From positions 7,998,001 through 8,062,000 of the forward strand of contig OZ004612.1 in NCBI GenBank assembly GCA_963924565.1: a DNA stretch of 64,000 bases. The letters run 5' to 3'. Under the pieces are notes generated by a model, which was given only the letters and a program-made list of their open reading frames with translations, did no database searches and was not told the DNA's origin. The stretch comes from Ascidiella aspersa. Taxonomy: Eukaryota. The first letter of the stretch is position 1. Every line of letters begins with the position of its first letter. This document shows positions 17,659 to 62,036 of this stretch, piece by piece. The position numbers and the translations under genes are program-made.

Positions 17659-20600
17659 TCACTTGTAGTTGGCGTATGTGTCAAACGTTGACAGGTACTC
17701 CAGTATCACAGAATAGATGAACATATAGGAGTTCTAAATGTATTTGTTAGAGTCATGCTGATGAGCTAGGACAGGATGAAGTAAATATAATATTTTACAC
17801 ATACCATATCGCCAACCATGTTAGGTCTCATTTCCCGCAGATCCTTCACGGTCCTGAAGACATCCACTTTGTTCTGAGCTTTCAGACGTTCCAGGATGTT
17901 CACCAGGGCGATGAATGCTCCAGTTCTTTGGCATCCATCGCTGTATTTATTTCGATTAAAAAATCGTATTAGCAAAGAGTGAACAGATTTCCGGTGGTTT
18001 GCAAACAAATTTGACCAAACTTATGCTCGCCGGAGATGTATATATTTAAAATTCAAATAAGTAGATTAGTGGCCGGACATTTTACCTGACACATATAGTA
18101 CATGAATTGACTAAGAAAATAAAAAAAATTAGGGAGATAGACGATTTAGAAGCGTTCAGAGCTGTTGAATTACTTCTAGGCAATTTAAGTGAGTGAATGT
18201 TTTACCTGCAACACACTAACACTCTTCCTTTTTCACGTTTGTTTTGCTGCAGATCTTCCAAAATCTGGATTGCTTTTATCACAGTTCTAGCGCTTGGTGG
18301 CGCTTCAGAGCTTTTCCAGTTCTTTACAAGAACGTAGTTGATCGCTCTTTCCATCTGCAAAAGTTCACCGCGGTTAAGGTGAACGTTTTTGTGTTACTAA
18401 AATTATATGACCGTTGGATCAAATGGCTCATGGTATGAAACTTTGGTAAAGCGCAGTTACCTTAGTAGGAACATTAATAAATTAAATTAAAACGCGGAAT
18501 TTTAGCAACTATAAACAACCGACGCTCGATATTCAACAACAAAAAAATAATACTCCTCTTAAAAAGTGTTTAAAAAAACGTTCCTTTATGCAACGATATG
18601 ATATGCACAGGGCCAGGGCTGCGGAGTCGGTTAAAAATACCCCGAGTCCGACCCCGGTCAAATGTGTGATTTCGTGGTCACAAGTCCCGATTCCGGCCCA
18701 GACTCTACAGCCGGTATTCTGCCAATTTACGTAACTGAAATATTGGGAATATTTAGCAACCAATTTCTAGGCGTGTCGTATAATTCATCCACTCAAAACA
18801 CATAGTTGGAAAATATTCCACCATGTGCTATTCCGCCATTGCAATTTCCAGTTAGCCGTCATATCAGCTTTGAAATTTGGTACTGCGCGTGTGCATGTCG
18901 GACTTGGCACTCGGGTAGTTTTACGTGATCTTACTCGATTCCCGAGTTCGACTCCAGCAAAACAAACCAACTCATTGAGTCCCGAGTCCGACTCCGCAGG
19001 CCTGCACAGGGCCCGCAATCACCAAATTCAAACGTGAAAAAATAAAACGTCGATAAAGGGGGTGTAACAAAAAAAACTTCATAAACTACGAAAACAACAT
19101 ATGACCTTGATTGCCCCTTTGACCTCTACTCGCAGAATCTTGTGCGACATGTCCTCGTTATCGATGCGTGATGTCGCTTGGATAGTGATGCTTCCAAGTT
19201 GAACAGAAGCGTTTTGCATCATTCGAGCTAACCCGTCTTGAAGATTTTCCTAAATTGTTTGATCCAGAAAAATTAAAAGTATGCTTTCAGTTGTTACAAC
19301 AGACAGGTTGATTCTGGCAATTACCTGCAGACCTACGATTACGTCGACTTGTTGCTCGACTGCAACTTTCCAAAACTGCTGTACCCCATCACGGGTTGGC
19401 TGCCGAGACGCTATAAAATCCGTTGAGCAGCCAAAGTCCTACAATAAGGGTTTTTATATAATTTGTTTAACTAGTCTTAACATTAGATTGATTTGAAATG
19501 TTGCATGATTTAACGTTTCTTGAAGTCGAACTTACACAAGATAGCGACACACACACATTCCTGTAGCATTATAAAATACCTACTGCATTCAGATCGATGG
19601 TCTTAAGTTAAATCAGCTGCCTACAATCAGGGTTATTATGCAAGCATGACAAGGGTAAGCAACTCTTTACCTGTATGAATGAAGCATCGATCTTTTTGGC
19701 AGCTTGGTCTTTATCCGACCAGGTTGAAACTCGAAGAATATCGCCTAAAATTACCAAACAACTTTTTGTTTAGCTAAACATACAATTTGAAAGGTCGCGT
19801 ACGAATCGTCGAGGTATTGGCTTACATTTTTTTTGGTCGACAACTAGAGCTTCTGAGAGAAGATTGAATTCTTCAGATTCAGTTTCTTGTCTACGCAGAA
19901 ACATATGTTTTAAAGTTACACGACCAGTAATTATTAATAAGGCTAGAAACGTACAACTCATCTTCATTCATTGCTTGAATGTCGGCGGGTGCCCGATCGA
20001 AGTCGGCAAACAATTCATGCTCAGTAAGTATCCTCTGAATGAACATGAACTGGTCCTACGGAAACGAGCGCGATTCTGTTACGTTATGCTTTTTAGACTG
20101 TTTATACCGAACACCAAACTAATAACCTACCACATTCTGAACCATGTCAGTTCGGTTTTCTCTCATCCTGGACACTACAGCAGAAACGTCGATGTTCTCT
20201 TTAGCATTCAGTTGGTCTATTAGAGTATCTATTGCGATATAGGTTCCTGTGCGTCCAACTCCAGCACTGTAAAACACAGCACATTACGTTTGACTTAATA
20301 AACGACCTACAGGGCGGTGCAAACTTGGTCAAAGCACCTGCAATGAATAACTAGTGGCTTTGACTGGTCTTCAACTTCCTTTACCATTTTTCTCAGATAA
20401 ACCATTTTTGTTGTTGTCACTGGTATCCCGTGGTCAGGCCAGGTGGTGTATTGGAAGTGAACCACACTTAAGCAACTCTAGAAATTCCGGGAACCAATTT
20501 AATTGTAAAAAATATGTTATTTTAGCAAAGCCCGCTGTTGTAGTTCAATTGAAAACTGAAAACAAACATAGAACATCTAACATCAAAACCGGCACCTGTT

Positions 20601-23600
20601 CCATTTTTAAGTCAAATGTTCTCAGAATTATTCCTCCAACGTCAGTTTCTTGCTTCAAACTAACAAGTACCATTCCGTAGGCTTCTTCTTTTCCCAAATC
20701 GGGCCAGTATTGGTCGCACTTTACCTGCATAATAAACGTAAATTAACTGAACATAATTCTGAAGGAAGACAAACTTTTATTCAATTGCTGCTCGTATAAA
20801 ATGTATACTTGAATGCATAGAGAAGCTTGGAAATCTATTGATGCAATGCTACATATATTTTCCCTTCGCTTATCGGTATGCTTTTATAGTCATGCAAAGC
20901 AGTTTTTCCTTGTGGTGTTTTGCGTTGCGAGAACAAACAAAAATAAAATTGGAGTTGAAAATCCGTAATTGTTACGTAGGCGGTTTAAGTATAGCTTTGT
21001 AAATGGCAACAGTCGATACACAACAATTATTAAAAAAGGCCAGGCAAGTTCAATAGGTGGTTACCCTGATCGACATTTGGTGCAATTACTCAATCCTACC
21101 TTTCCATTCTCCTTTAGTTTAGTCAGCATGACAATCACCGAAGCTTGTTGCTGCCAAACCATTAACCAAAAGTCGCCAAATGTGTTTGGTTTTGGGCCTT
21201 GGGTGGCAATGAACTTTTTTTCGTTGCTGTACCCCTGGAAAATTAAAAAAACGCACACATAACAAGAACAATATAATTTGCCACAGCCATGTTTTGACTT
21301 TAATCAATGGCTCAACTGGAGCTCCGGTTCTTATGTTTTGTACAAACCTCGTTGTCCCTAAATTTACAAGCACGTCACTGTCGCTATACAGAAGGATTTC
21401 TTACCGGCATGTATGATGCATTGATGTAGTCGTCTTTGTCTTTTCCAGACAAAATAACTCGGGAATGATCATCTGAAAGAGCAATATGGACTAAGGCAGT
21501 GCTCTTCAACCTTTTTGGTTTAGTGAACCCTTAAAGTTTTTGTGAAAAACTCATGCACCTTATACACTTAAAAGTTAAACTGAGGTAAAAAGTAATCTAA
21601 ATAATCATTATGCTTAACAATTATCATGTTAATTAAACCGACGGAGCGGCCGTTTTTTACACACTGTCGGTGAGGGTTCGATTATGGCTGCAAGCTGCTT
21701 GCGAGTACTATTGCATGCCATAAAACCGCATTCGGTGTTAAATATTAATATTTCATTAAAAGTTTGTGATGCACCCTTGTATGCCTTTTCGTACTAGTGC
21801 ACCCCATGCATATTTTGGTTACCCTAGGGTGCACTGTGCACACCGGTTGAAGAGCACTGGACCAAGATATTGTAAACTACACACTTAAACGACTTTGATG
21901 TCTTCCTTACATGTGATGATGTTTTTGTATCTGTTTCTTGGTGCATTATGGTCCGACGCAGCTTGTTTGCAACTCTTTGGTGTGCTTTTATCAATTCGAA
22001 CTATTTCCTGCGATGTTTAAAACACAATAAATAACCGCTATAAATAAGTTAATGGTCTGTAATGCTACGTATACGTCAGTCGAAAATATAGATATTGCAG
22101 TGTAATATCAAAAATGTACATTTGAGGTTTAAATGCTTTAAGCTACCTGGAATTCCTTACGAAATATTGATCCATTGGCTGCTGATTTATTTTCGAATAT
22201 ACTCTTGAGTGTCTTTGGATTCTTCAAAACATTTAGGTTTTCATACAGTACTTGATTCCCACCGAGAACACCTTTTCGAGAAGATATACACAAGTTACAT
22301 TTGCAGTGTATTTGCTTTCAATTAAGCTATTTAAATCGCACCTTTGCTTGTTGAAGTGACATTCCTGACATTTACATACACTTTTTCCTCCTGGTTTATA
22401 GCAATCTATTATTATAAAGACAAAAGCGCACGGAAAATGAATGCATTACGGTTGTATATATGAGCAAATGCAAAACTATCTACTCAAAGTTTTTTTTTAA
22501 GCTATATTCAAGCTCGTGTATGTGCGAACAATCCACTAGTTATACCTTGGATTTCGTATTCATTGCCTGAAGATTATTGCTTCCTGCTTCTGTCTGGCTG
22601 GAATTGCCATTTACCTCAATAATGTCTGTTTAAAACGAAAAACAAAATTACATTATAAAGTTTCGAAAATTACATTTTAAGTTTCACTTGTAAGAAAATC
22701 ACAACGCTTACTGTCATTGTTTTCCTTTTTTCCTTCCTGAAGTCTATATAAATGGTTATAGAGAAAAGGCAGGTTAAAAGAGGCTAGCACATGTGTGTTT
22801 GAGTTATATATATATTCCATAAATATAGGCCTACCTTTTGCGTAGTACGATTCCAAGAACAATCAAAAGTAAAAGGCTTAACAACGCTCCAACTAATCCA
22901 CCTGTAAATGACACATGGACTTGTATTATTTCTTTAAAAGTCACGAGGCAAATTTGCAACCGGAAACAAGCAATGATGTTTTTGTTAGATCGTTTGTTTT
23001 ACTACACGGGATACTATTTTTCAGTATTTAATATGAAATACGGTGTTTGAGTGAAGGGTAACGTACCAACGATTCTACCAGTCGAAGTGTCAGTACTTTT
23101 TAAAGGAAGAGGCTTGAAACAAAATCCAGCGACTTGCGTTTGTTGACTTCCGCCCTCGCAAGAAAACGCCTGGATCTAAAAGGACAAATGCAGCATACAA
23201 AATAGTGCCTTAATAACGGTTGACCCTAATAAGAACTAACTGTTAGGCTTATGTTTTTTCCAGTTGAATGATTTGAAACATCGATCATATAGCTATCCGC
23301 AAAGGAAAATTCCTTGTGTACGTCCACAACTTTTCCACTTGCTGCTGTAATCTGTATTTAAAGAATAGTAATTATCATAGTGGATCGCAGTTCAGTAAAC
23401 ACGTCATTTTGAAATTCCTTACGTATTAGTCTCATCATTTGTAGAACTTATTAAGTCAAATTCAAGTCTTTTCAAAACTTAGTTCAAGTCATCAGTTGCC
23501 CAAGTCAAGTCATTTTGAGAGCAAGTTAATTTCAAGTCAAGTCATTGGTATTAAAATAAAACTTTACACTATTAAAATTGGTAAACAGGTCCGAAAATAA

Positions 23601-26600
23601 GAGATATATCAACTAATCAAATAACAAAATCTCATATAACAAAGTGATTGCTTCACGTACGCAAATTGGGATGAATAATGCAATTTTATTAAAACAAATT
23701 TAAAGAAAACTCTTAATTTAAACCCGAAGTTATTTGGCACAATGAAAGTCCAAATCAATTCATATTTCGAAAAGACTTAGGCTAAGTCAAGGTATGTCAA
23801 GTCATTTGAAAACATCGACTTAAGTGCACTTAAGTCGAGTGAGTAAATGAATTAAGTCATTGCAACACTGGTGGAGCGTCATAACTTGAAAACGCACATC
23901 ATAAAACGCACTTTTGGCTATCACATTAGATTACCGCGTATGAAGTGATGTTCTTGTTTGTCGATGATTTATTAAAAGCCACAACACAGGGCTGCTGTGA
24001 CTTGACGTAGGCGTTAGTGACTGGATCAGGTTTCCCGTATCCTGTTGTGACTTTGTTGCTTGAAGTAAAGGAAAAGGAGCCGCAGCCGGTTAAAGAAGCG
24101 TTGATCTGACAAAACAAGTAACGCTTAAAAGAAAATCCCACCTGGCGAGTTAAAGCGAAATCACCTGTATTTCATATACGGTACGTTTCTTCAATCCGCC
24201 AACCGTCAAACTCGAAACTGTTTGATTAAAAGTTTTTACTAGAATGCTCTGACCATTTTGCGAAACCGAAACCTAAAAACAAATCATGTCACAGTGTGAT
24301 GTGCTATGCTTGAGGTTTTGCTTTACGCTGTACGTCATTTAAATTTTCTAAACTCTAGCAAATAGCTATAATAATGTGTGTTAGCAAATACAGTGAGAGG
24401 ACTATGCAGAAACTATAACAAAGAAAAAGTTAATATGACAGTGTAAGATACAACGTCACAATGATAAATTCTTTGGAGTCATTACACTTATGGACAGTGA
24501 TTTACTTTTATTTACACCTCTATAATACACTATAATATTTTCGCCCTGTATAGTTTTTTATCAAAAGGGTGCTTTACAATTCGAATTACAAGCTTCAAAA
24601 CGAAGTGAAACTAAATGAAAATAAAAAGCAACTATGCACGCATAATATTTTAAAATACGAAAATTTGTCATGGGCCTTACTTTTAACTGATAAATAGATC
24701 CTGTTTTCTTGGCTAGTGTAGAAATGTCGTTTGACCAGGTGACGTTAATCACAGTGGAATTACAGTCCTTCAGTATAATCCGTGTAGACACTAAACAAAA
24801 GTCAGAAAAAGCGCAGGTAGTTAACATTTGAGCCAAGTTTGTAAATACAGAGTGTATAAAAAATTGGCGCTAACAGTTCCAAATTGACCCCTATTTGTTA
24901 AACGGATCTTTTTCACTGATGAAAATGCCATCGCGGTGTGGCAAATAACAAGTTAGCAAATATAAAAATCTATCAAGCATCACCTGAAATATGATAACAT
25001 TTTACTTTTTATTTCTTCGAATTTAAAAAATGTAACATTACAGCTCTCAGATAAATTTAATCCAGTGATTCTTAACCTTTTATCGCTTATGACACCCCTT
25101 AAAAAATAAAAACTATGATTTTCAGCATCCCCACTGAAATTTTCTTTGAGTATTTTAGTAATATACTCTGAATGAAACTTTAACAGCACAAATCAACTTA
25201 TTAAATAAACACACCATGCCTTCTAAATGCGATATAACAACAAACCTAAATATCTGAGGTCATTTGTGGATTGCTTATCTCAATTTTCGCGAATGCCTAA
25301 TGTTCGGGGTCCATTGGAACACGAGGAGATGCACAAAATTACACCACTGTATGTAAACGTATTGCAATTTTATAAGGTATATAGCCTATACTTACGTGTT
25401 GGTCTTATTTCACACGAATAGTAGGCGAGTTGCCCCGAGCAATTTCTATCTTCTAGATCTTTCATTCCATACGAGAATGCTTTCTGTTTGCATTTGAAAG
25501 GGTTATTGGCAAAGTTAGCATTTTGACCATCGCTCCAAAGCCACTGTTTGGAATTGGTGTTGTATCGCGCTCCCACAAATACGCTCCTCACTATTTTAAA
25601 CGTTAACGTATTAAATGTAAAGGGTTCTGGATGCAGAAAAAAATAGTTCACTGGACGGTTGACTGAATTTCTGGGAAAATCCTTTTCCAAATCCCTATAT
25701 TATAGGCGAGAATAAAGTGCATGAATTGAAATGCGTACCTGGAACGTTAAAATTGCCACTTGATGTATTAAACCCATCGAAAAAGCGATTTACATCAGTC
25801 AATCTGCTTGAATGTGGATGGAAGCTTCTAAAGAAATTGTAAATCGTTTGGTTATCAGCAGCTTGTGATTTCCATGCAAACAAACCAAAGTCGTTAGACC
25901 ATGCTGAAAAAATATAAAATTTTGCGATGAAATTTGTTCTTAACTTTAAAAGTCGAGGTTTCTAATCATTTAATCATATAACCATAGTTGGCCGTGACGC
26001 ATTAGGTACGATTCTGGGGAAAACTGTTTCCAGTTGCACTAAACGAAACATACGATTAATCAGTAAATTACGTCACGGTTGTAAATCTCAGCAACATCTG
26101 ATAAGCAGGTTCCGAAAAGGCTTTTAAGAAAGCTTATGCAAATAAAATGGTTACATTTTAATTAGAGATATTTGCTTTTTAGACGTTCAGATTCTAAATA
26201 CAAAATTACTAATGGAAATATATTTTTTTTGCGTTAAAGTGGTGACATCAAATTCAATATAAATCGTAACTAAAGATCGATATAGGACCATAAAATAAAT
26301 TATTTGACTATAATTTCCTGTGGAGTTGTCGTAGGCCTACACTAAAGACAATTTGTGCACATGGAAAATCACGCACAATTATAGAGTAATATACGCAAAC
26401 ACTTACATTCGGAAGTTGGGCAACCGTTCTTTATTATTCCGCTTTGTGATTTTTCTCCTTGTGTCACAACCCTCCATCTTTCGCTATGATATTGGCAAAA
26501 GTAAACTGCTATCCTCTGTGCATTATCACTGAAAATTAGTTATATATCGTAGTGTTGATTATGGTGTTTTGTAATAGGAGTTAATCAGCAAAAGATACCG

Positions 26601-29399
26601 TTTTTTGACGAAAATGTTTGACATATATACAAAAGTGCAATTATGCACGTTTATTGGGAAAGATATTTAATGTAGCAGGGCAGCTCTGCTGTGCGCATGT
26701 CTGTATATGAGCAATGAACTATAGTAGATTTAAACGCACCTCAGATGCGTATAGCTTAGGATTGTTGGATCTAAAACATTTTCTCTCGCCTTATAGCCTA
26801 TTAGCCATGATTCCGTTAAGAACTACAGCCCGTCGTTTATCAACTGAATGTAACATTATAAACCAATGTATCATCGTGTTACTATACTTAACATTACGAC
26901 CGCTTCAACTTGTGACAGAAAATATGACATTCTCGTACGCTGTTTTAAATATTGTATTCTCGTACACTGTTTTGTATAGGCCTAAGACATTCTCGTACGC
27001 TGTTTGCCAATAGATGAGTGACACTCCCACCCAGGTTTTCTTAAGGTTTGGTTTGGGTGACCGCTAAGTAGTTTTAAGAGAGCGCAAGTGTTTCATTTAA
27101 ATACCAAAAAGTTGCAAGTTCGTTTAGGTCCCCCAAAACACCTTAAAAAAACACTGCTCCCACCAACTACAGTTTTACACCATGTTTAATATCCAGGTTG
27201 TTTCCTGATGTAATTTTATTGCGAGAAGGCTACCACCTTATTTTTCCGCCAAAGATTACCACGATGCAATCCGATACCAAATAAGGTCATGACTAAGCTC
27301 AAACAAGCAAAACACATAAAATAGAAACGTCATCTATTTTTCCAGATTATAAGACATTTGATTTAGCGCTACGAAATTTAGTTGACTAACGTTAATATTG
27401 CTGGTTTTTGAAAAATATAGTCTTCAAGTTATAGAAATCGCTGGCTTGGATCGCAAATCATTATGACTGGAACTCCTATATTATTTGGTATCGGGTCGGC
27501 ACCGATATGAAACTATCGAGCGAGTACCGATACCACCCCTTGGTAGCGGCTATCGGCCCCGATACGATAATATCGGACATATTCGATTATGTTGACCATT
27601 TGTTGGGTGTTTAAAAAACAGCTACGTGACCAGTTAAATGATAGATGAAGTATTTTTAATAAACTCTCACGTTTTGTACAGGTCCAAGTACCAGATTTGA
27701 TGAAGTTCTTTCGCACTCTTCCAATTGCCAGTTATCGCTGAATCCTTCGAGAATTTGTAAACTATTCTCTGTTGGGGAGGTGTGCTCTTATCAGGAAGAT
27801 AATCGTAGAAGATGTAAACTCTTTGTAGATCTTGGCAAAATCAAGCATGTACTATTTTTTATTTTAATAAAACATCTAAAACCGCATGAAAAAGTTTTTT
27901 ATTTAAAAAAGACATACTCATTTAAAATATCAGTTTTATTGGTTATTAACTTCGACAACTATGGTTTTAAAACGAAATATTAATAATGTAACGTTTTTGC
28001 ACACTTTGGACTACAGATAGACTTTATAAATAACCATTTAGCGTTGTAACGAGTGGAAGATATTATTGCATACAACATTGTACCAGTAGTAGGTCTATAA
28101 GACTCTATATCAGTGATTCTCAACCGCGGCTCTCAACTGTACATTTTTCGGCTCTCACTAACGGAGTGAAAAATTAGTTAGCAGTAGCAGAATTGCAACA
28201 AAGGAAGTAAAAGAAATTAAAAGTGAATGAATTTGATCAGCAAGGATCCCGAGTACGAAGTACTAATGTTCCCGGGTACTTCCGTCCGGCTCTTTAAAAT
28301 AATTTTGTGGTTTGTGACGTCATAATATATTTAGTCTTGATCGACAAGCTATGGCAATAAGAAACAATTATATGCCTACTGTTGTTTTTATGCGGCTCCT
28401 TGCAAACTTTATAGGTTTGAAATGCGGCTTAGGCTCTAAAAAAGGTTGAGAATCACTGATCTATGTGCTACAAATACTTACCGCCAAAAAGAGAAAGGTT
28501 ATGCGTTTCGCTTCAATTCCGTTGCCGGATCTTACCTGTATTATTGTACTTCCGCAAAATCTCCTGGTAAAACTTATCTTTGACAGCTTGATCTTTGACA
28601 ACAGCAAGTTGCCCGCCCAACAACTTGCACTCATTACTTGCCGTGTTCGCATCCACGATCGTATCAGATAAAGTGTAAATGGTATTTCCCACTGCGAACA
28701 TCGTAGGACTGCAAGCTGTAAAGTCATACAAGTGTGGTAAGAAAAAACACCTTTTAAAAAGTTGGACATATGTGAAGCTAAGTGGCTAAAGGTAGTCAAC
28801 GCAACCATTAACATCCAAAAAATGATTCTACCGCGAATAAGAAAAACCGCTATCTTATCGCTACCCATTCGAGCCGCATTTTACCGTTTAGCATCTCGTA
28901 CTGCTCATATGTATTTTTTTCCCTTCCTCCACTTATTTGCGCCGCCTACTCATTTATCCCAGTCGTGTTGCCTGCGAGGCTGTAGTGCTTTTCATTGCGT
29001 TTTTCAGTCTATTATCATGTTTTAATATTTTATTGTTTACTTTTATTGGTTGGTTGATGCCTGCGCTCTGATTTTATTCATTTGATTTATTTATTTGTAC
29101 TCTTACAGGAACTGATGATGCCACTTGGCGAAATATATTTTCCTTTAAACAAAACGTCTGATCCTGTTTTTACTCATGTTTATAACTATGAGTTTTACTT
29201 TTTAATGTGGTAAGAAGTTTGGTAAACTGTTACTTTAGGCGCCTTATAGACCTTAGTAAAAAGCTGTAACTAACTATACTTTTTTCAAACAATTTTATAT
29301 CTATGTTTATATAATGATTGTCATTAGTTGCTACTAACCTGTAGCTTGGCAAAAGCCACATAAACATATTAACGCCTCCAGAAGAATCGTAAATTGCAT
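17659..29399 (-). CDS. Receptor-type protein tyrosine phosphatase (copy A): signal peptide, 2 C-type-lectin-like domains, 2 FN3-like domains, TM, D1 (active) and D2 (degenerate) PTP domains; about 30 exons
   Basis: Exon 1 [20 protein letters not shown] (29339-29399). CTLD-like exons [15 protein letters not shown] and [35 protein letters not shown]3-like INVTWS and [43 protein letters not shown] (~22834-22901). D1 has [66 protein letters not shown]2 has [11 protein letters not shown] and [18 protein letters not shown]. Ends FDTYANYK* (TGA 17659-17661). A few D1-D2 linker exon boundaries are uncertain. Confidence 0.9.
18614..19004. mobile_element. hAT-type MITE (CAGGGCTGCGGAGTCG family) in a D2 intron of copy A
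   Basis: Ends cagggctgcggagtcgg / ccgactccgcaggcctg; perfect 8-bp TSD cacagggc (18606-18613, 19005-19012). Confidence 0.9.
21497..21859. mobile_element. hAT (Charlie-like) MITE
   Basis: TIR cagtgctcttcaacc / ggttgaagagcactg; 8-bp flanks gactaagg/gaccaaga. Confidence 0.8.
28111..28458. mobile_element. hAT (Charlie-like) MITE
   Basis: TIR cagtgattctcaacc / ggttgagaatcactg; 8-bp flanks ctctatat/atctatgt. Confidence 0.8.
29107..29144 (+). ncRNA. Minimal type I hammerhead ribozyme motif, probably in a Penelope-like LTR remnant (~28860-29200)
   Basis: aggaa-CTGATGA-t-gcca.ct.tggc-GAAA-tatatt-ttcct: stem I aggaa/ttcct, short stem II, palindromic aatatatt stem III region. Confidence 0.6.
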
Positions 29400-33641: not shown

Positions 33642-34262
33642 CTGCGGAGTATATTCTTTTGTTAATGGCATTATAAACGGTTTCAGTAGGATTACCAATT
33701 TCAGAGCTATCTGTTAAGCATAAAGTATCATAGACATGGGTTGTTACAAGAGTACCATTTGAGCTAATATCTGGAAATTGAGTTGTATCTGGCGTTGTAG
33801 TGACAAGGAGGAAACAGAATCCCTTAACATGTATATTTCAACAGGTGAGACATGACCACCGTGCTATCTGACTCCACTAATTCGAAACTAAAACAAACTT
33901 TCATGTTGTTTAAAGAGCATACTGCACAAGAGCACAAGAGCGACTGCGATGGGGATTAATTGAGTCGAAATGCTGACTGGATTTGCCAGAACGGCCAGGA
34001 AAGGAAATGAGTATCGAGGTGAAATATTTAACACTTTACCAGGCGAACATGTTATAATTCCAAGCACAAACAGACATGCATCGTTCCTCTACAAACATCT
34101 GTAGAGTTTAACTTGCATCCTTGCAATTATGCGCTTGGGTCTAAAGTTGAACATATAGAACCAATAAAATTATATTAGGAATGATGATGCAACAGGTAAC
34201 ACTTGAAGTTTTTCGTCGTGGATGATCTCTAACATCGATTGCAAAACCATCGGCATAAGTAT
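33642..34262 (-). pseudogene. Decayed exons 10 and 11 of a fourth receptor paralog (relic D); duplicate at ~62530-62878 (+)
   Basis: The 62.5-kb copy reads YADGFAIDVRDHSQRE (copy A exon 10: [16 protein letters not shown]) and ag|TQAHNCEDAS*STDVKGFCILLVTT (copy A exon 11: [22 protein letters not shown]), with splice sites retained and an in-frame stop. Confidence 0.7.
33830..34093. mobile_element. Candidate solo LTR (264 bp)
   Basis: Begins TGTA, ends TACA, flanked by 4-bp duplication AACA (33826-33829, 34094-34097). Precisely absent from the duplicate at ~62690. Confidence 0.7.
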
Positions 34263-52199: not shown

Positions 52200-53317
52200 G
52201 TGGGTAACAGTAATTCAGAGGCAAAACAATTACTTTTCTGCTTCATATGTATAGCCATGCAGTGCGGCGTCAGCGTTTTTTAGGCGGCTAAATATTACAT
52301 GAGTGTCCGACAAAGGCAGTTAGGCGAGCAACAAGTGTACAATGTCAGGTGCAACGGTTTTAGCAATTAAGGGCGTTCAGTTGCAAAAGAAACATTCCAT
52401 CGTAAAACGTCTTAAGGGTTGTTCAAATATTCAAGGCCATTTTTTAGGCCAACATTCAGCGGTTCATGCACAGCTTATTTGTCAAGTAGGCTAATAGTAA
52501 CCCATTAGTAAAACGAAAATCGAGAAATCATCTCGACGATTGTAGTAACATCGATCGGCCTAGTACAAAACAGAGCCTAACATAAAAAATACCTTGGCGG
52601 CGTCGAAGAACAAGATTTGTAATGACTGTATAAGCTAATTTAAATTGAAATGACTTAATTATACAATTTTTAAAATTAAGCGCTTTTGTTCTTTTATTAA
52701 TGGCTGTATTTGTTATTAGTGAAGAAGTGAAACAAGTAAAATATGTTAAACACAATTCTTGGTATTTTCATAAGAGGGTCGAGAGCCTTTCAAAGGGGGC
52801 CACGAAGCATAAAAGGTTGAGAACCACTGGCATAGACCAAAGCAAAACATTTTTATACAAAATCCACGTTACAATGGGGTCACTTTTATATTAACAGGTT
52901 CTTGTCACAACACTATACTTTACGTCGTAACAATTAAGTCACAAAATTTAGAAACACCTGTACTTTGTCCCACGTTTATAAGTGCTATGGTGGCAGAACT
53001 ATTTGTCAACATTTTATAAATTATAAACCAGTTAAGGCAAGTGTTGCTCGTTTAAAGCAGGTGGGCATAAAGTCTGCAAGCCTCAGAAAGCAACACGTTT
53101 TATAAATAACTATATATATATATATATATTAGACGTTAACTAGCATTAAAAATGTATTTCAGATCGCTGTTATAATATGTATATAAGGCAATTGAAAGGC
53201 CATTTAAATTTACTGCATATTTCAGTTAAAACGTGAAATATCAAGATTGAATTTCTACTAGGATAGAAAACCTGGTGCGCTAATAGGTATCGACTAGGGC
53301 AGGCTATCATGCTATAC

Positions 53318-53658
53318 CAGGGGTTCTTAAACTGGGGTCCATGGACCCCTTGTGGGTTCGTGAACTAGTTTTAGGGGGTCCACAAAGGTCTAATTGAAAT
53401 ATTAGTGTTTATTTAAGAAGTAATCAATTTATTAAAGAAATCAATTTAGTTAAAATAAAACGGTTTTGCACTGAATGTATTTGGACTCCATTTCACTTTT
53501 ACGATTTTGGACCAAAATCAGCAAATTTATGAAGTCTATTTGTACTGTGACGTCAATTTATGACGTCATTTTTTTAATTTTTGTTTTTGCCTACAGTGGT
53601 CCACGCGAGATGAAAGTAAATTTTAGGGGTCCGCGGTAAAAAAGTTTAAGAACCCCTG
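53318..53658. mobile_element. hAT (Charlie-like) MITE in the spacer between copies B and C
   Basis: TIR caggggttcttaaact / agtttaagaacccctg; TSD tgctatac/tgctgtac. Confidence 0.85.
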
Positions 53659-54756
53659 TGCTGTACTAATTATCCTGGTTACAGAAAATGGTTTGAAATC
53701 CCAAAAAGGCTTGTCAATGTTTTTTATTCAACTTTTGAAATCAAGGTTGAACGACGGTTAAGCCGTTTGTTTACTTCGGTTGGATGAGTTGCTGTTGGTT
53801 TGGAGTTTAAACGTATTCATTGAAATGAAATTACGAGTTTCGCCAGTAGGATTTTTGTTGAAAAGGCAAAGTATATTCAGTTGAACAGTGTGTTGATTGA
53901 TTGTGTCAAATAAGATGAAATGAAATTATAATGTAAGTTTGTTGTAGCCTTGTAGAAATTTATCTATGCATTACCTTGGGGAAGCATGTAAGATCCGTCG
54001 TCTTGTTTCTGGAAAGTTTGAATTGCTAAAAAACATAAGGCTGACCTTAAACGAAGTTACAGCGAATCCGGTGGTGGTACAAAGCTTAACCCCAGAATTA
54101 TTTTTTTGCATTTCTTACATAAATTTAACTTTATCTATGTTACGCAATTTCTTTTACACTCAACACTAAAATTTTTACAACCTGGTTGTACAACCTTAGC
54201 TAAAAGGACGTTTGTTAAATTAATTGCTTTATAACAGTGTTTCTTAACCTTATTTGGCGACTACCCAAATAGTAATAACAGCAAAGTTTTGGCAACCTAA
54301 TTTTCTTCACCGAACTAATTTTAAGCTTAACGCAAACAAAGCTCAAATAAGAGATTATTAATAATAACTTCAAATTTATTCATTATGAGCGATGTCGCAA
54401 TTGTTGCAATTTCAGAGAAATCTTGCTCAGAACGAATGTCAATAAATCTAACCAGGTGAAATACTCCAGTCAGCTACCGACCCAAACCGATTGGCGATTT
54501 AAATGTTAAGAAAACACTGCTTTATGATCTAGTTGTTTTACGTCATATATTAACGGCTGCTAAAAAAAGCATAGAGGAATTAAGCATAACGTAAGATATT
54601 TTAACCAAGCTGAAATCATTACCAATGCCAGACGTTGGTTGATTGTTTTCTGGTCTTTGTTGGTCGGTATTTCGTTCATGAATCCAAGCATGAAATTTAA
54701 TCAAAAACATTTTTGCAGCTCACGAAATGTTCACGTGTTTAATTACTGTTACCCAC

Positions 54757-57700
54757 CGTATTTTCTGTCCGACTAAAACACTAACCAATAGGATTAAAAT
54801 CGAAGTGGAGATGATGCCAAAGATTAATCCAAGATCTAAAATCAAACCGTTACGTTGAAAACTAAGTAAGACAACACTGGTTCTAAGATTTTAGGTGCAG
54901 ATGTTTATAGTTTATAAGAATCTGACCCACCGAGCAGTGGTAACCGATTATAATGTAACCGAACTAACTTATTTTTGTGAATGCAATTTAATCAGCTCAT
55001 AACGTTATAAGTTCGGTCGTTGTGTAATTGTAATTTTCTTTTATTTCATTTAGTGAAATTTCATAATTCGTCTTAATGTACATTTAGGAAAAGGTGTAAT
55101 ATAGACGCTATTGTAATGTTTCCCCCAAACCCTGATTTCTTAAGTTTACTACCGGTGTTATTGCTGAGCTTGCCAATTGCACTTTCAGTCGAACTAACGC
55201 CAGTGGCCGTGGTGGTTGTATTGACAGGCGTAAAACAAAAACCGCTGACTTTCATTATGTGACTGCCGCCCTCGCAAGAGAATGCCTTGATCTGTTAAGC
55301 ATGTCAAATGTGAACATTTGATATTTTATTATATTTTTTAACATTAATATAATCATTTTAATCATTTGTTTTATTCAATATGCTTACCGTAAAGCTTATG
55401 TTTTCTCCACTTGGATAATTATTGATATCGACGCGGAATCTATCAGCATTGGCCAAAAAATTGTGAACGCTCTCGTGTTTCGCACTGTTTGCTGTAATCT
55501 ATTAATAAAACAGTAAAGTTTGCCGTTGGTTCTATAGCATATCAGTTTTTGTTCATCTAATATTCTAAAAGGGACATCAAAATTATTTGGGGTCCAATGA
55601 TTACACCAATGAACGAAAACTATGCCATGTAAGAAAACGAATACCTCATATGCGACGATATTGCTGTTGGTTGATGATTTATTAAAAGCCACAACACAGG
55701 GCTGCGGTGACTTGACGTAGGCGTCATTGACTGGATCAGGTTTCCCATATCCTGTTGTCACTTTGCTATTTAAAACAACGTTATACGAGCTACAACCAGT
55801 GATTGAAGCGTTGATCTAACGAAATAAATAACAGTTAAAACAAAATCAAAACACGTGAGTTGAGCTGCAATCACCTGTATATCATACACGGTACGTTTCT
55901 TCAACCCGACAACCGTGAAACTTGAAACTGTTCCGGTAAATATTTTAACCATTATGTTGTGGTCGTTAATGTTGTGGTCAAAACGTTTATCTGAAGAATA
56001 AAACGTGTATGTCAATTTTTTTCGGTATATCCAAGTGCTCAATGGGTGCAATAGAGACTTTGAGTTTAAATAACCTGTCTCGATTTTTCTATTATTTGCT
56101 TTTAAGAGACCAACTTCAGTTTCTTAAAACACCTTTGAAAACACTATACTTGAGACATATAACCAATTAACCATATGTTACTTAAATATTCTTCTCTGGA
56201 AGAATTGCATAGGTGATTTATGTATCTTTTTTGTTATTTAGCCATTGCCTTTTTGCAATAAAATATAGACATTTTTACAACGTATTACCTTGATGTGATA
56301 ACCATATCCCGCGTTCTCGGCTAATTTGTAAATGTCGTTCGACCAGTTTAGATGGATCATTGTAGAGTTACAATTCTCCATTGCGATCCAAGTTGTTACT
56401 ATAGTACAATTTTAGTATAAGAATGAAAGCTGTCAAGTGCCGTAGAGCTTAATTGTTTTTAGAAATTACGTCAAAACACTACGTCTAACGATGACGTCAT
56501 AACGTCACATTTAAATAAATGTTATAAAGAAATAACATTAAGAGCATCAAACATTTCGTTTGTTTTGGTTTAGGATTAGGTTGGAGAGGTATTAGTTTCA
56601 ATACAAAAGCTACATTACAAAGATGTTATCAATTCGAATAGTAAAAATGGAGATTAAGGGGAACATGGCCGCGTGCCCCCACCCTGGATCCGCCCGGCCC
56701 GTATGTACATAGTAGTGAATTTAGTTACGAACAGCGATAGCATAAACTTACGCTTTGGCCTCACTTCACAGGAATAGTAGGCGAGTTGCCCCGAACAGTT
56801 TCTAACTTCCATGTCTTTCATTCCATACGATAATGCTTTCTGTTTGCATGTTGTAGGTGTTGTGATAAAGTTTGCGCTCGTTCCATCGCTCCAATTCCAC
56901 TGCTTGGTGACTGAGTTGTAACGAGCTCCCACAAATACACTTCTCACTATTACCACAAGCATATATTCTTATCAAATAACTTACTCATTTGTTAGGCATT
57001 TCTGGGTCAATAAATAGGGATGAAATTCAAAAACATCAGAAATTGTGTTACTGCTTAAATAGAATAATGTGTTAAGCAAATAATTTACTGCAATAATCAC
57101 AATTATCGTTACCTAAACTAGTGTCCAGGTAATAACATGTAAATAGACGAATAAATCTGTAACTAAAATACGTCAAAATACTTAATGAAGACAAAACCGG
57201 TTTCTCTAAAATGCATTAATATCGGCGGCTTAAATATTACTGAACTGTTACTTTTCTGTCAGCTACAAAAGTTCTGTTGAAGACTGAATTTATTAGTCTG
57301 TAGTAATAAAACTTAAATAAATAATAGAAAACCTGGCAAATAGAATGTTTTCTTAAAGGTATCAAATCCAAGAAATAAGTTATCCACATCAGTCAACTAG
57401 CTAGATATTGGATAAATGTTTCTGATGAAGTTATAAATTGATTCGTATCCCGCAGCCGGAAATTTCCGTGAATATAGGTAAAAGTCGTTTAACCATCCTG
57501 CAAAAACAAGAAAATTGTTTTTCCAATTGTTCTTCCGGCAAAATTTTAAGTACCAACGTTTCGACCACCTATTCGGGTAATCTTCTTCATGGCAATTTTA
57601 TTGCAAATAGGCGAAAAAATAGATATACCGTTGGGCAGTGGTCGGCAACTGCCGGTCCGCGGACGGATGCCGGTCCGCGAGGAGTTCGTTACCGGTCCGT

Positions 57701-60700
57701 AGCAGGGTTGCCAGATTAAATTTTGATTTAAACCCGAACTGTACGTAAAAAGCCGGACAAAAGTCAATAACAATTAACTGTATTTTTATATTCCGAATAT
57801 ATTAACTTTCGTTTAAATATACTCCATGGTTGATTGGTATGATGAAAAATAACATTAGTATCAAGCTCGCGTGAGGTTCAAAATAACCAGTGTGCTGTGG
57901 CCATATGAGTTGCATAGCACGTTCACAACATCCAAAAATGTATATTTTTATTACAAAATCTCCTCGTGACGTACAATATATCGAAAAATGGGCTAAAATA
58001 TCATGTTTTTTGATGTTCAAGTGAAATAGGCTACAATAAATTCATGCAAACAATGTTTATAAACAATGTCACATAATGAAAGGATTTATTATTTTGAAAT
58101 TTAAGCAGAAAAGGTTACGAAATACATATGTAGTTTAATTAGCTTTAGCAAATATACAAAATGATGGAAAAAAGCCAAAATGATGAAAATGAGCCGCGTC
58201 TAGAGTTTAATTGCTTGACGGTCCGAAAAAAGGCCGCATGCGGGTTTCATTAACTTTAATAATTCCTAGATACGAGCATCATGTTGCGGCAAAACAAGCT
58301 TAAAGTTTGCATTGAAAAAAATTGTAATAAATTTCCTTTACTGAACAGTTGTTTATTTTAAAGGCCGGTCCGCGACAAAATTTCAGATTTATAACCGGTC
58401 CGAAGTGCAAAAAAGGTTGTCGACCCCGCCGTAGGGAGTTTGGTTTGTACAATTTTTAACAATACGCATTACAATTTTATTTTAATAAACATTCTTCGTT
58501 TTGTGTCAATCACAAAATAGACCACACCTTATACAGATTGTTCAACTTTCATTTTTAAGAATTTGAATTTTCATAGAACAAAATCGATGACCTGAGTACT
58601 ACAAATAAAAACACAATAGCTACAAAACTGCGTTGTTAGCAGTTGTTCTTTTACAAGGGCGTGAACGATTTTATTCCTGTGAAAGGCAGGTAAAGAAACC
58701 AGGCATTATATGCGACCGATTTTCGTATCACAACTGTTGTATCACTAGCAGTACATTTGGCGTTCCCGAAATATTTTCGTGTTAATGGTGATTCAATGGC
58801 TGTCACATTACCCGCCATAAATTTGTAGAGTCACGTTTTATTTGAGTCTTTGTGGTTTGTTTCTTATTTTGATTTAATAACAGTAAAACCATATTAATTA
58901 TAGTTAAATACCATATCGATTAATTAGTGTACAGAAATTATATTTTTTTAGAGCGTTAATAGTGCCGTGAGGTATAATTTAACGTTACAGTGATTAAAAG
59001 CCATTTAATTGGAAAAATGAATGACTGATCGTGAGCGACTATACGGGCCATGGTGAGACAAATCGTCAACTTGAACATGAGTTTTCTATTATAAACTTGA
59101 ACGATTTATCTCGTTTTATCGTTTGGAAGCAGTTTGTTTGTTATGTAGAGGATAATTGCAAGTGAACATCGGCGCTATATTACAAGCTTTTAAAACTCCA
59201 AGATTGTTTTTGCTGCTATACTTACCTTCGGTAATTGGACAACTGTTTGTAATTTGTCCTTTGTCCGATGACTCTCCTGGCGTCACCACTCTACACCTTT
59301 GATGTTTATATTGGCAAAAGTAAACGGCTTCTCTCTGAGTCCCTTTTCTGCAATTGAGTTACAAACAGAAGTAGAATTTCAGAAAGGTTTGGTTACAGAA
59401 CATATTGCGAAAACACAATAAGTGTGGATAGTTGGCAGTTTTGTAATGACTTAAGTCACTGTTTTTCAAAAAGACTTGAATTATCTAAAATCTTTTGGAT
59501 AAATGACTTTTTGAAATTAAGTGTTTTATTTAAGCATTTTTTTCGTAAAATTAGGTTAGTTATATTAATTTTTGCACATAAAGCAACTTACTCTATCTAT
59601 TTGCCTTTTTGGTATTTTTAGTAATGGGTAGTTCACCCAATTTTAATAGCTTAGCGTGTAACTTTTATGACGAAGACTTGACTTGGTATTGACTAGCATT
59701 AACTATGACTTGACTGGGACTCGACTTGTTATTTATTCAAAAAGACTTGACTTGGACTTAAGTTATTTTACATATGACTTGACTTAGACTTAAGTCATTT
59801 CAAAATGACTTGTTTACAACACTGATATTCGGCATATTCGGCGCGCAGATAACCGACATTTCTAATGCTGTTAGCCCTTTACGTCTTACTAAACAATAAC
59901 ACAGATAAAATGTAATGTAAAGTTATGGTTTTAAAAATATGCACACACAACCTACGTTGTTTATTCGAAGCTGATGCTGTTTTTTTCTCACGTCGATATA
60001 TAATGCTTGCTAACGCAAATTTTCTAGTATATGCTTGCGTTAGGAATTTCGGCGTTTTGAATTATGTAATTCTGGTATTAGCGTGTTCATTGCGTGTTTA
60101 CTGGCCGCACAGTCGACAACGGAATCTGGACCCGAGTAAGACTGCCCGAGACCCGAGTCCGACATGTGCATGCGCCATACCAAATTTCGAAACAGATAAG
60201 GCAGAAAACTGTAAATGATAAAAGTGTAAAAGCATATGATGGAATATTTTACAACCATACATTATGGTTGTATGGGTAAAATTACACTATGAGTATGCTG
60301 ATAGAGTCGTAGCCGGACTTGGACTTTATGTAACCACACATTTGGCCGAAGTCGAGCTATGATTATCTTTAACCGACTCCGCAGCCTCGTTTAAATTAGG
60401 TTAAACTTACGTTTTGTACATGTCCAAATACCAAAGTTGCCCAAGTTTTTTCGCACTCTTCCAATTGCCAGTTATCGCTGAATCGGTCGAGAATTTGTAA
60501 ACTATTCTCTGTTGGGGAGGTGTGCTTATATCAGGAAGATGGTCGTAGAAGATGTAAACTCTTTGTAGATCTTAAAGGAAAAAATATTTTAATTGTTAGA
60601 TTTCTGTATGATCAGGTCATATATCAGCAGGATAACTTGTTCTGCAGTTTTCAAGTATAAATATGCAATTTTTTAAACCATTTTTAGGTTTCGATAGGCA

Positions 60701-62036
60701 TGAACTAAATTAAGGAAAGACTGGATGGTTGGTAGCAAAATAATAAAAGCCATTGGATGGTCCGCTGTATGAAAATTGCCAGAATAATTTTCCTAATTTT
60801 TAATTTTCTAGCGTTTCAAACATTTATTAGTTCTTCATTTAATAAATAACAAAATATGTATTCAGATAGGCGTATTGGTAATCGAATTGATCTATGATTT
60901 TCTTAAACGGTAAAAACTAAAAAAAACTTTAACCAAAAAATGTAAGAAGTTTTATCAAATTGTCGTTCTGTATAATTTAATCAGTCAACATTCAAACTAT
61001 TTTATCTTAATTAGGGCAGTTTATCGCCGGCTGACAAAATTAGTTTTGTCACTAAACTGCTCTACGGCGGTTATTTTTCGTCAAGTTGGACGTTTTGTAC
61101 GACATATATAGTTAAAACCAGAAATTTAATACTACCAAACGAGGTACCTTACTTCTTATTGTTCGTATAGCTGTTGAAATAAAAACAACTTTTGCAACAT
61201 TTAGGAATAACATTTGATTTCTGGTTAGGAAAGTTCGAGTTAATCAAATACTTACAGAGTTTTCTTTACGACACTATTCTATTTCTTGTGGCCTTGTTAT
61301 AGCCTAGTTTAGCAATCGCTGCTCTACAGGATTTTGCACTGCAACAGTATAGTGTTGGGTCACCACTCATCAGATATCACCATTTGTCACAGAGAATTTG
61401 CTAGTGAATCTTACCTGGTTGATTGTGTTTGTGTAATATCTCCTGGTAGAACCTGTTAATGACAGCTTCATCTTTGACAACAGCAAGCTGCCCGCCCAAC
61501 GACTTACATTCATTATCAGCCGTGTTCGCGTCCACGAGTGTATTGGATAAGGTGTAAATCGTGGTCCCAATATTGAACAATGTAGTGTTGCATGCTGTAT
61601 AGATATTTCACATTTAGGGCATAGGTGTAATTTGGTGGTTGGTAAATTAATTGTCAACATGATCAGTACCATCTGTTTAAATTATAGGGAATAATCGATT
61701 AACCCTTTTATTTAATATTGGCTGCACAGTGCACGCTCATTTGCCAGTCTATAGTCTCTTAAAAAAATGTCAGAAAAAAAATCGACTAAATAAGAATAAA
61801 AAATGGCATATTTAACAAATAACTTTTTTTTTGTTTAGAAACATTTTCTGTAACAAAATATCCAATTCCTAATCTAGCATATACTCTTTGATTGTATCGA
61901 AAATACAATGTGTTGTAAGGGTATCGCTTAAGACCTCTTTATTTCAATAATACATCTTATTCTATTTTTACTAACCTGTAACTTCGCAAAATGATGATAA
62001 ACAAAGCACTGCCACAAAGCCAATAACAAATTTCAT
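54757..62036 (-). pseudogene. Copy C of the lectin-like/FN3 receptor, disabled or truncated
   Basis: Same 12 exons as B (ATG at 62036, TM exon 54757-54835). Exon 5 has an in-frame TAG at 57397-57399 (TTG in B). Exon 8 has a net +8-nt change from a duplicated gaccacaacat (~55954-55980), giving a frameshift and TAA. Confidence 0.8.
57636..58428. mobile_element. hAT (Charlie-like) non-autonomous element specific to copy C intron 4
   Basis: Ends cagtggtcggcaac / gttgtcgaccccg; ccggtccg subterminal motifs; TSD ccgttggg/ccgtaggg. Confidence 0.8.

What the first reader, a model, noticed from the sequence alone, without database searches (positions are those of the whole stretch)
17659..62036. Paired-receptor-like cluster: same lectin/FN3 ectodomain with (A) and without (B, C) a phosphatase tail
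Seen: three paralogs share exons 1-12 (signal, 2 CTLD-like, 2 FN3-like, TM) in the same phases; only A continues into tandem PTP domains; C is disabled; a fourth relic exists. Established: paired receptor families (Ly49, KIR, SIRP) combine similar ectodomains with different tails and evolve by birth-and-death and gene conversion. Inference: an invertebrate analogue in which the inhibitory member carries its own phosphatase and the tail-less member acts as decoy, competitor or heterodimer regulator, possibly in immunity or allorecognition. I know of no described family like this, but could not search.
Basis: partly seen in the sequence, partly recalled or inferred. Interest (0 to 1): 0.85.

Follow-up and report, generated by a model that had tools for sequence, protein, structure and literature searches.

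The report
Phosphatase receptor with tail-less twin genes
One cell-surface tyrosine-phosphatase receptor gene sits beside near-copies that keep its outer, lectin-like part and membrane anchor but lack the phosphatase, and at least one of them is transcribed. This looks like an immune-type "paired receptor" system, but no function has been tested.

Summary
Gene A (minus strand, 29399-17659) encodes a signal peptide, two lectin-like domains, a stalk, a membrane anchor and tandem phosphatase domains.

Copies P (plus strand, 34753-52254) and M (minus strand, 62036-54720) have the same 12 exons in the same phases and stop just after the membrane exon. The extended 124 kb held no other phosphatase exon.
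- **P** is intact and carries a 10.3-kb foldback transposon in intron 2. It is transcribed and correctly spliced in public runs.
- **M** is dead, with a stop in exon 5 and an 8-base insertion in exon 8.

Just outside the window lie two more intact tail-less copies. One of them, A', is a clean recombinant: A's head joined to an M-type tail end.

On this chromosome about 127 such lectin exons exist. Some 40-45% have no phosphatase exon downstream. Head-to-head pairs of a phosphatase receptor and a tail-less gene recur in tandem at 32.4 Mb.

So the paired architecture is real and family-wide. A decoy or regulator role is inference only. Selection tests on P were not significant. This scan had already noted related lectin-receptor and phosphatase arrays on other DNA of this genome.

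The parts
17659..29399 (-). Gene A: complete receptor-type tyrosine phosphatase. ATG at 29399, stop TGA at 17661-17659.
   Evidence: Exon model. The last exon (17733-17662) and the stop were read. Phosphatase exons by Pfam.
23067..29399 (-). A exons 1-11, the ectodomain: 29399-29339, 28715-28536, 27830-27671, 26528-26407, 25903-25739, 25590-25396, 24790-24681, 24272-24165, 24105-23935, 23351-23241, 23175-23067.
   Evidence: AG/GT sites and phases are conserved in five paralogues. Exon-6 profile hits CTLD structures only. Exon-2 profile gives a weak CD93 CTLD hit.
22835..22901 (-). A exon 12: membrane-spanning segment, ending in a phase-2 donor.
   Evidence: The same type of membrane exon is found in the 7.2-Mb cluster genes.
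20122..22016 (-). A phosphatase domain 1, with NRY, WPD and [10 protein letters not shown] motifs. The active site is split by an intron at about 20338/20266.
   Evidence: Motif scan. Pfam PF00102 profile positions 13-222 over five exons. Junction read. Best PDB matches are PTPsigma/LAR, then epsilon/alpha.
17659..19438 (-). A phosphatase domain 2. Cys-X5-Arg is kept and there is no WPD Asp. The C-terminal exon is included, and a repeat insert lies in an intron at about 18536-19018.
   Evidence: Pfam PF00102 on three exons. Junction. The repeat matches 8788-9080.
33781..34260 (-). Possible relic of exons 10-11 of a lost copy, upstream of A. Its mirror lies at about 62530-62707 on the plus strand.
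   Evidence: Two collinear weak tblastn matches, E 0.001-0.003.
34753..52254 (+). Gene P: intact tail-less paralogue. Exons: 34753-34813, 35197-35376, 46505-46664, 47752-47873, 49556-49720, 50010-50204, 50562-50671, 50974-51081, 51141-51311, 51458-51568, 51665-51782, 52121-52199. If the last donor is not used, the frame reads on to the stop at 52252-52254.
   Evidence: Model. Run X3 contigs join exon 4 to exon 5 with 0 mismatches and exons 6-7-8 through GT..AG joints. Stranded RNA-seq run X4 covers the exons on one strand only.
36037..46363 (.). Foldback transposon, 10.3 kb, in P intron 2. Arms 36036-40320 and 46364-41395, about 97% alike.
   Evidence: Self-comparison. Absent from M at the homologous place. 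Many copies on other chromosomes, often as inverted pairs.
51783..52120 (+). P intron 11, with a GC donor (GC..AG). If it is retained, the frame stops at 51881-51883, before the membrane segment.
   Evidence: Sequence. One X3 contig runs unspliced across 51774-52149, and the intron-only bin has depth 5.5 against 12-15 in the flanking bins.
52216..54740 (.). Spacer between the P and M arms. By orientation it is M's 3' flank, and the same 2.5 kb follows A' outside the window. It contains high-copy repeats at about 52226-52828.
54720..62036 (-). Pseudogene M: tail-less copy with exons 62036-61976, 61594-61415, 60570-60411, 59347-59226, 57497-57333, 56946-56752, 56398-56289, 55990-55875, 55815-55645, 55498-55388, 55291-55174, 54835-54757.
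   Evidence: The polarised substitution count on M's branch is near neutral (N 31, S 9).
57397..57399 (-). In-frame TAG in M exon 5.
55971..55978 (-). 8-nt insertion in M exon 8 that shifts the frame (approximate placement).
   Evidence: Alignment. Exon length is 116 against 108 nt.
32511..36008 (.). Left part of the outer inverted repeat, matching 64000-60720 at 92-96%. With the flanks it extends to 23954-36008 against window-equivalent 72660-60720.

Best explanation
The window holds part of a young, recombining gene cluster. The cluster belongs to a large lineage-specific family of type I receptors with a C-type-lectin-like head.

Shown:
- Gene A is a complete receptor tyrosine phosphatase with a catalytically equipped first domain.
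- P (in the window), A' and D (just outside) are intact paralogues that end after the membrane exon. M is a dead copy.
- The copies arose by inverted segmental duplication and homologous recombination. A' is A's head joined, inside exon 8, to an M-type tail end.
- P is transcribed and spliced.
- Phosphatase-bearing and phosphatase-less genes with related heads are both common in the family. In one other cluster they sit as head-to-head pairs.

Inferred:
- The tail-less genes make a membrane-anchored head-and-stalk protein without enzymatic or motif-based signalling. If intron 11 is retained, the product would be secreted.
- This protein would bind the same or similar ligands as the neighbouring phosphatase receptor. 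It would thereby compete with or modulate that receptor, as a decoy or a non-signalling partner in cis.
- This would be a gene-encoded counterpart of the ectodomain-only isoforms of vertebrate receptor phosphatases, evolving like immune paired-receptor families.
For: - Gene structures and intact frames.
- Phosphatase domains and active-site motifs only in A.
- No other phosphatase exon in the extended 124 kb.
- Transcription and splicing of P: X3 joins exon 4 to 5 with 0 mismatches and has a GT..AG joint 50204/50562. X4 reads lie on one strand only.
- A' has a single clean switch between window-equivalent 72391 and 72401, and its heads are 96-98% identical to A's.
- Deep paralogue pairs, including the two tail-less genes P and D, have dN/dS 0.28-0.32.
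- D is open over 1.5 kb despite dS of 0.2 or more from P, even in the shared tail-less 3' part.
- Family census: 51-59 of 127 lectin exons have no phosphatase exon within 12-16 kb downstream.
- Intact phosphatase-less genes with a membrane exon occur at 27.9 Mb and 5.1 Mb.
- Head-to-head phosphatase/tail-less units are repeated at 32.4 Mb, and the tail-less membrane exon is identical in two units.
- On a tree of the heads, the presence or absence of the phosphatase needs at least 3 changes, and heads group with their neighbours.
Against: - There is no functional, binding or protein-level evidence.
- P's own branch has N 20, S 10 (omega about 0.5). This is not significantly different from the dead copy M (Fisher p 0.42).
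- RNA depth on P is low. Copied promoters can drive transcription of useless duplicates.
- P's intron-11 donor is GC, and a contig retains that intron. P has no AATAAA or ATTAAA within 900 nt of its stop.
- The low dS of the 3' part between P and D (0.21 against 0.47-1.4 elsewhere) shows that the tail-less end can spread by conversion. The age of tail loss in each gene is therefore uncertain.
- dN/dS in exons 9-10 is high (0.55-0.86).
- The tail-less membrane segment has no charged residue and the tails have no tyrosine signalling motif. A classical activating partner is therefore excluded.
- Expression of A, A' and D was not examined, because only one read-laying run was available.
Confidence: 0.55

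Rival explanations
1. The tail-less copies are non-functional by-products. Palindromic segmental duplication and unequal recombination copied the 5' two-thirds of a receptor phosphatase gene together with its promoter. The copies are transcribed for that reason alone and are decaying.
For: - M is already dead.
- P's branch is not significantly more constrained than M's.
- P has a GC donor, a retained intron 11, no polyadenylation signal near its stop and a 10-kb transposon in intron 2.
- The repeat boundary lies 16 nt after the membrane-exon donor and next to a high-copy repeat, as expected of a random breakpoint.
Against: - Three of four tail-less copies are open over about 1.5 kb, including the old copy D.
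- Phosphatase-less genes with the same exon plan are numerous and intact in at least three other clusters.
- Those genes are conserved as part of a repeated head-to-head unit.
- dN/dS between the tail-less P and D is 0.28.
Confidence: 0.3
2. The tail-less genes are not tail-less. They have short, fast-evolving cytoplasmic exons further downstream, or they splice to remote exons. They would then be receptors with a different signalling tail, as earlier notes of this scan propose for other lectin-receptor families of this genome.
For: - All tail-less copies keep a plausible GT donor at the end of the membrane exon (GTGGGT).
- D has a candidate small exon about 260 nt downstream.
- Earlier notes describe tails with tyrosine motifs in related families (not tested here).
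Against: - No conserved coding block was found downstream of D, A'/M, or the 27.9-Mb and 5.1-Mb genes in any pairwise translated comparison.
- P's downstream flank is M's flank in reverse orientation, so P at least cannot share a downstream exon with M.
- No RNA joint leaving exon 12 was listed, although five joints were not shown.
Confidence: 0.1
3. Assembly artefact: the inverted arms are the two haplotypes of one locus, wrongly placed side by side.
For: Arm identities of 92-97% are in the range of allelic divergence in very heterozygous marine invertebrates (my own knowledge). Palindromes are a known assembler error.
Against: - There are no gaps in the extended 124 kb.
- The arms differ in structure: A has phosphatase exons and A' does not, only P has the foldback insert, and only M has lesions.
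- P/M identity falls to 72-77% in the middle.
- Contigs of two DNA runs carry P-specific sequence, and an RNA contig matches P exactly where M differs.
- Depth rises about 2-4 fold where P, M and A' are at least 97% alike, as expected of several real copies.
Confidence: 0.04

Closest known systems
Classical tandem-domain receptor tyrosine phosphatases (LAR/PTPsigma, PTPalpha/epsilon, CD45)
   Same: Type I membrane protein with two cytoplasmic PTP domains. Domain 1 has the NRY, WPD and HC(X5)R motifs. Domain 2 lacks the WPD aspartate. The best PDB matches of the domain-1 exons are PTPsigma, LAR, epsilon and alpha. The C-terminal ...YANYK ending recalls PTPalpha (from memory, not tested).
   Different: The ectodomain is built from C-type-lectin-like modules. 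To my knowledge no vertebrate subtype has these, and four full-text searches found no such description. The family is amplified to more than 50 phosphatase-bearing genes on one chromosome.
Phosphacan, the soluble ectodomain form of RPTPbeta/zeta (PTPRZ1)
   Same: An ectodomain-only product of a receptor phosphatase that binds the receptor's ligands without catalysis (PMC4859157).
   Different: Phosphacan comes from the same gene as the receptor. Here the phosphatase-less form is encoded by separate, duplicated and recombining genes, and it mostly keeps the membrane anchor.
Vertebrate paired immune receptors (Ly49, CD94/NKG2, KIR, SIRP)
   Same: Clustered multigene families with very similar heads on different tails. 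They show birth-and-death evolution, pseudogenes and recombination that re-pairs heads and tails. The exon-6 profile's best structural relatives are CD94 and Ly49 lectin-like domains.
   Different: The genes here are type I, not type II. The 'inhibitory' side carries its own phosphatase instead of an ITIM. The other side has no charged membrane residue and no ITAM route. No immune expression or ligand is known.
Botryllus Fester family / Fester co-receptors
   Same: A tunicate multigene recognition system in which members without signalling domains are encoded and expressed as pairs with signalling partners, with copy-number variation of gene pairs (PMC12582321).
   Different: Those are immunoglobulin-superfamily proteins with ITIM/hemITAM co-receptors. 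There is no lectin-like head, no phosphatase domain and no sequence relationship to the genes here.

Membership tests
Classical receptor-type protein tyrosine phosphatase | PTP catalytic domain (PF00102) with the HC(X5)R, WPD and KNRY motifs | tested here: met
   Gene A only. Pfam is over its cut-off on several exons. Motifs.
Classical receptor-type protein tyrosine phosphatase | Second, membrane-distal PTP domain | tested here: met
   PF00102 matches on three exons at 19438-17769. Cys-X5-Arg is kept.
Classical receptor-type protein tyrosine phosphatase | Signal peptide and a single membrane-spanning segment (type I) | tested here: met
   Read from the model: hydrophobic exon 1 and exon 12. 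No predictor was run.
Classical receptor-type protein tyrosine phosphatase | The same features in P, M, A' and D | tested here: not met
   No PTP exon follows their membrane exon. They are relatives of the family's ectodomain, not phosphatases.
C-type lectin-like domain (CTLD) | Match to Pfam Lectin_C above the gathering score | tested here: inconclusive
Exon 6 alone scores 17.0 bits, E 0.01, against a cut-off of 22.6.
C-type lectin-like domain (CTLD) | Profile similarity to solved CTLD folds | tested here: met
   For the second domain, all 35 PDB matches of the exon-6 profile are CTLDs, with CD94 at E 6e-4. For the first domain there is only a weak CD93 CTLD match, E 0.024.
C-type lectin-like domain (CTLD) | Calcium/sugar-binding motifs (EPN or QPD, plus WND) | tested here: not met
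   Neither motif occurs in the exon-6 alignment. The domain is lectin-like of the NK-receptor kind, so sugar binding is not implied.
Fibronectin type III | Match to Pfam fn3 or to solved FN3 domains | tested here: inconclusive
   Exon 8 gives fn3 at E 0.12. The exon-9 profile found no FN3.
Paired immune receptors (activating/inhibitory) | Neighbouring genes with near-identical ectodomains and different cytoplasmic parts | tested here: met
   A and A' are 96-98% identical in exons 1-7. A and P are 47-89% identical by exon.
Paired immune receptors (activating/inhibitory) | Inhibitory member signals through an ITIM that recruits SHP phosphatases | tested here: not met
   A carries its own tandem PTP domains instead.
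Paired immune receptors (activating/inhibitory) | Activating member has a charged membrane residue that pairs with an ITAM adaptor | tested here: not met
   The membrane segments of P, M, A' and D have no Lys, Arg, Asp or Glu in the core. The tails of 13-21 residues have no ITAM or ITIM.
Paired immune receptors (activating/inhibitory) | Co-expression on the same cells and shared ligands | not testable with these tools
   Only bulk reads on P were laid.

The most novel reading that the evidence does not exclude
This invertebrate chordate (taken by earlier notes of this scan for a sea squirt) would have a recognition system convergent with KIR/Ly49/SIRP pairs but wired differently. One arm is a lectin-like receptor with a built-in tyrosine phosphatase. 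The other arm is a phosphatase-less twin. The two are kept as head-to-head gene pairs, and recombination repeatedly re-matches their heads, as in A and A'. Ligand engagement would be read as the ratio of catalytic to non-catalytic receptors, without ITIM/ITAM adaptors.
Probability: 0.25. Interest if true: 0.8.

Novelty: new variant of a known kind. Interest (0 to 1): 0.62.

Why it matters
Receptor tyrosine phosphatases are mostly orphan receptors, and how their outer parts control the enzyme is a long-standing question.

This family offers natural experiments. There are dozens of phosphatase receptors with lectin-like heads. There are matched genes that keep the head but lack the enzyme. There is also a fresh recombinant (A') that puts one receptor's head on a tail-less stalk.

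If the tail-less genes work as competitors or partners, this would be an adaptor-free route to the activating/inhibitory balance that vertebrate immune receptors reach with ITIM/ITAM pairs. It would occur in the closest invertebrate relatives of vertebrates.

Even if they do not work, the locus documents how paired receptor families are born: through palindromic duplication, exon-level crossover and transposon insertion.

Tried and rejected
- **Pfam on single ectodomain exons** gave only sub-threshold hits. The exon-9 profile against the PDB gave noise (Rab23).
- **Joined model left out.** So there is no InterPro run, no structure prediction of the whole ectodomain and no test of A-P binding.
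- **Hidden cytoplasmic exons.** Translated comparisons were run between the flanks of D, A'/M, A, and of the 27.9-Mb and 5.1-Mb genes. They found nothing conserved.
- **Splicing of the tail-less genes to phosphatase exons elsewhere** is not supported. None lies on the right strand from 20 kb left of the window to 40 kb right of it.
- **Polarised substitution test of P against M:** the trend goes the expected way (omega about 0.5 against 0.9) but is not significant.
- **Foldback element as the disabling lesion of P** is rejected. It lies inside intron 2 and is a dispersed transposon. Splicing across it was not observed directly.
- **Four full-text searches** found no description of a receptor phosphatase with a C-type-lectin-like ectodomain, or of such pairs.
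Full report
**Layout.** The window is C6:7998001-8062000 of a 308-Mb genome. Earlier notes of this scan take the genome for a sea squirt; I did not test that.

Self-comparison shows nested inverted repeats:
- 32511-36008 matches 64000-60720 at 92-96%.
- 46364-52215 matches 60710-54741 with identity that varies from 72% to 95%.
- A separate 10.3-kb palindrome lies at 36036-46364.

I added 20 kb on the left and 40 kb on the right. With these flanks the outer repeat extends to 23954-36008 against window-equivalent 72660-60720.

**Gene A.** PTP motifs lie on the minus strand.
- Translated comparison of the three regions gave twelve shared coding blocks.
- Nucleotide alignments of each block with its flanks fixed the splice sites.
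- A runs from ATG 29399 through 12 ectodomain and membrane exons into the cytoplasmic exons.
- Pfam PF00102 matches five exons of a first PTP domain (profile positions 13-222) and three exons of a second.
- After splicing, the first active site reads [12 protein letters not shown] and the second [13 protein letters not shown]. The intron sits at the same place and phase in both.
- The domain-1 exons are closest to PTPsigma/LAR, then to epsilon/alpha and CD45.

**The copies in the window.** P (plus strand) and M (minus strand) have exons 1-10 of exactly A's lengths and phases. Their exons 11 and 12 keep the phases but differ slightly in length.
- P is open throughout.
- M has TAG at 57397-57399 in exon 5 and an 8-nt insertion in exon 8.
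- Both end with a membrane exon. The P/M repeat stops 16 nt after that exon's donor.
- If the donor is not used, the frames close after 13-21 further residues.
- No PTP exon other than A's exists anywhere in the extended 124 kb.
- The big palindrome in P's intron 2 is a dispersed foldback transposon, with copies on many chromosomes.
- Two weak, collinear matches to exons 10 and 11 upstream of A are the only trace of a 'fourth relic'.

**Two more tail-less copies outside the window**.
- D (78884-85315) is a diverged, intact copy. It lacks intron 11 and ends in the same way.
- A' (67108-73567) is 96-98% identical to A in exons 1-7.
- From the middle of exon 8 onwards, A' is 97.5% identical to M, including 2.5 kb of M's 3' flank.
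- At the sites that distinguish A from M, A' switches once between 72391 and 72401, apart from a few isolated discordant sites.
- A' is therefore a recombinant that puts A's head on a tail-less stalk and anchor.

**Domains.**
- A profile of exon 6 from the paralogues and from metagenome ORFs hits only C-type lectin-like structures. The best are CD94 and Ly49. The calcium and sugar-binding motifs are absent.
- Exon 2 gives a weak match to the CD93 CTLD.
- The FN3 label could not be confirmed exon by exon.
- The joined models were not searched or folded.

**Transcription.** Of the four runs found, X1 and X2 cover introns and behave as DNA. X3 covers exons only. X4 is stranded RNA-seq. Results:
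- An X3 contig joins P exon 4 to exon 5 with no mismatch, at places where M differs by 7-10%.
- Another X3 contig joins exons 6, 7 and 8 through GT..AG joints.
- X4 reads at 97% likeness or more lie on P's exons with the first mate on the minus strand only, as expected for a plus-strand gene.
- One X3 contig crosses intron 11 unspliced. That intron has a GC donor, and if retained it would end the protein before the membrane segment.
- Variants in these runs are a mix of M/A'-type and private bases. This points to alleles and conversion tracts.

**Selection.**
- Deep pairs, including P-D, have dN/dS 0.28-0.32. P-M has 0.62.
- Polarised with D and A, P's branch has N 20 and S 10, and M's has N 31 and S 9. 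This is omega of about 0.5 against 0.9, and the difference is not significant.
- D's open frame over 1.5 kb argues for constraint. Its dS from P is 0.2 or more even in the shared tail-less 3' part. The argument holds provided D has been tail-less for that long.
- That 3' part is much less diverged than the rest (0.21 against 0.47-1.4). The tail-less end has therefore moved between genes.

**Family.**
- Exon 6 has 129 matches in the genome, 127 of them on C6 in seven clusters.
- A's domain-1 exon has 93 matches, 56 of them on C6.
- 68-76 of the lectin exons have a PTP exon within 12-16 kb downstream on the same strand, and 51-59 do not.
- All seven genes at 7.2-7.3 Mb carry PTP tails. On a tree they are the sister group of the five local genes.
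- Genes at 27.9 Mb and 5.1 Mb have the same exon plan and a membrane exon, but no PTP exon in the 7-8 kb that follow.
- At 32.41-32.47 Mb each tandem unit holds a minus-strand full receptor phosphatase and a plus-strand tail-less paralogue, head to head. The tail-less membrane exon is identical in two units. At least five such plus-strand genes exist. This is the arrangement of A and P.
- On a tree of the heads, the presence or absence of the phosphatase needs at least three changes, and tail-less genes group with their neighbours.

**Reading.** What the tail-less proteins do is not known.

They lack the features of classical activating partners. The most economical mechanism is competition with, or cis-modulation of, the neighbouring phosphatase receptor. 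The nearest precedent for an ectodomain-only form of a receptor phosphatase is phosphacan (PMC4859157). The nearest tunicate precedent for paired non-signalling and signalling receptor genes is the Fester/FcoR system (PMC12582321).

I found no paper describing this family. The protein library holds no annotated relative.

Noticed in passing
window 36037-46363: Foldback transposon, 10.3 kb, with 4.3-kb arms and tandem repeats at its centre (40384-41392). Related copies, often as inverted pairs, lie on C2, C4, C5, C7, C8 and C9.
   Followed up: partly
window 9804-10121 (minus strand): An exon of a cytochrome P450 gene (PF00067, E 4e-9). It belongs to the next gene to the left of A's 3' end.
   Followed up: partly
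window 47201-47401, 49010-49411, 52226-52828: Very high k-mer depth in the DNA runs (over 1,000 to about 228,000) and reads on both strands in RNA-seq. These are high-copy repeats inside P's introns and at the P/spacer junction. The junction at 52215/52216 abuts one of them.
   Followed up: no
L003 (window-equivalent 85113-85315): Copy D has lost intron 11: exon 11 and the membrane exon are one exon. A, P, M, A' and the 7.2-Mb genes all have an intron there. This may be an intron loss through a cDNA intermediate.
   Followed up: no
window 51782/51783, 55174/55173 and L001 (A'): The intron-11 donor is GC instead of GT in P, M and A'. A has GT at the same place.
   Followed up: partly
L020-L025 (C6:32412001-32472000): Tandem units of about 35 kb, each with a full receptor phosphatase and a head-to-head tail-less paralogue. 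The tail-less head sits on a much longer branch (0.70 against 0.11 changes per site).
   Followed up: partly
window 18536-19018 and 8788-9080: Inverted copies of a repeat, 76% alike. One of them lies inside an intron of A's second phosphatase domain.
   Followed up: no
L005/L006 (window-equivalent -13100 to -4000): Open frames with an NFX1-type zinc-finger pattern and a helicase-like motif lie left of the window. They were read by eye only.
   Followed up: no
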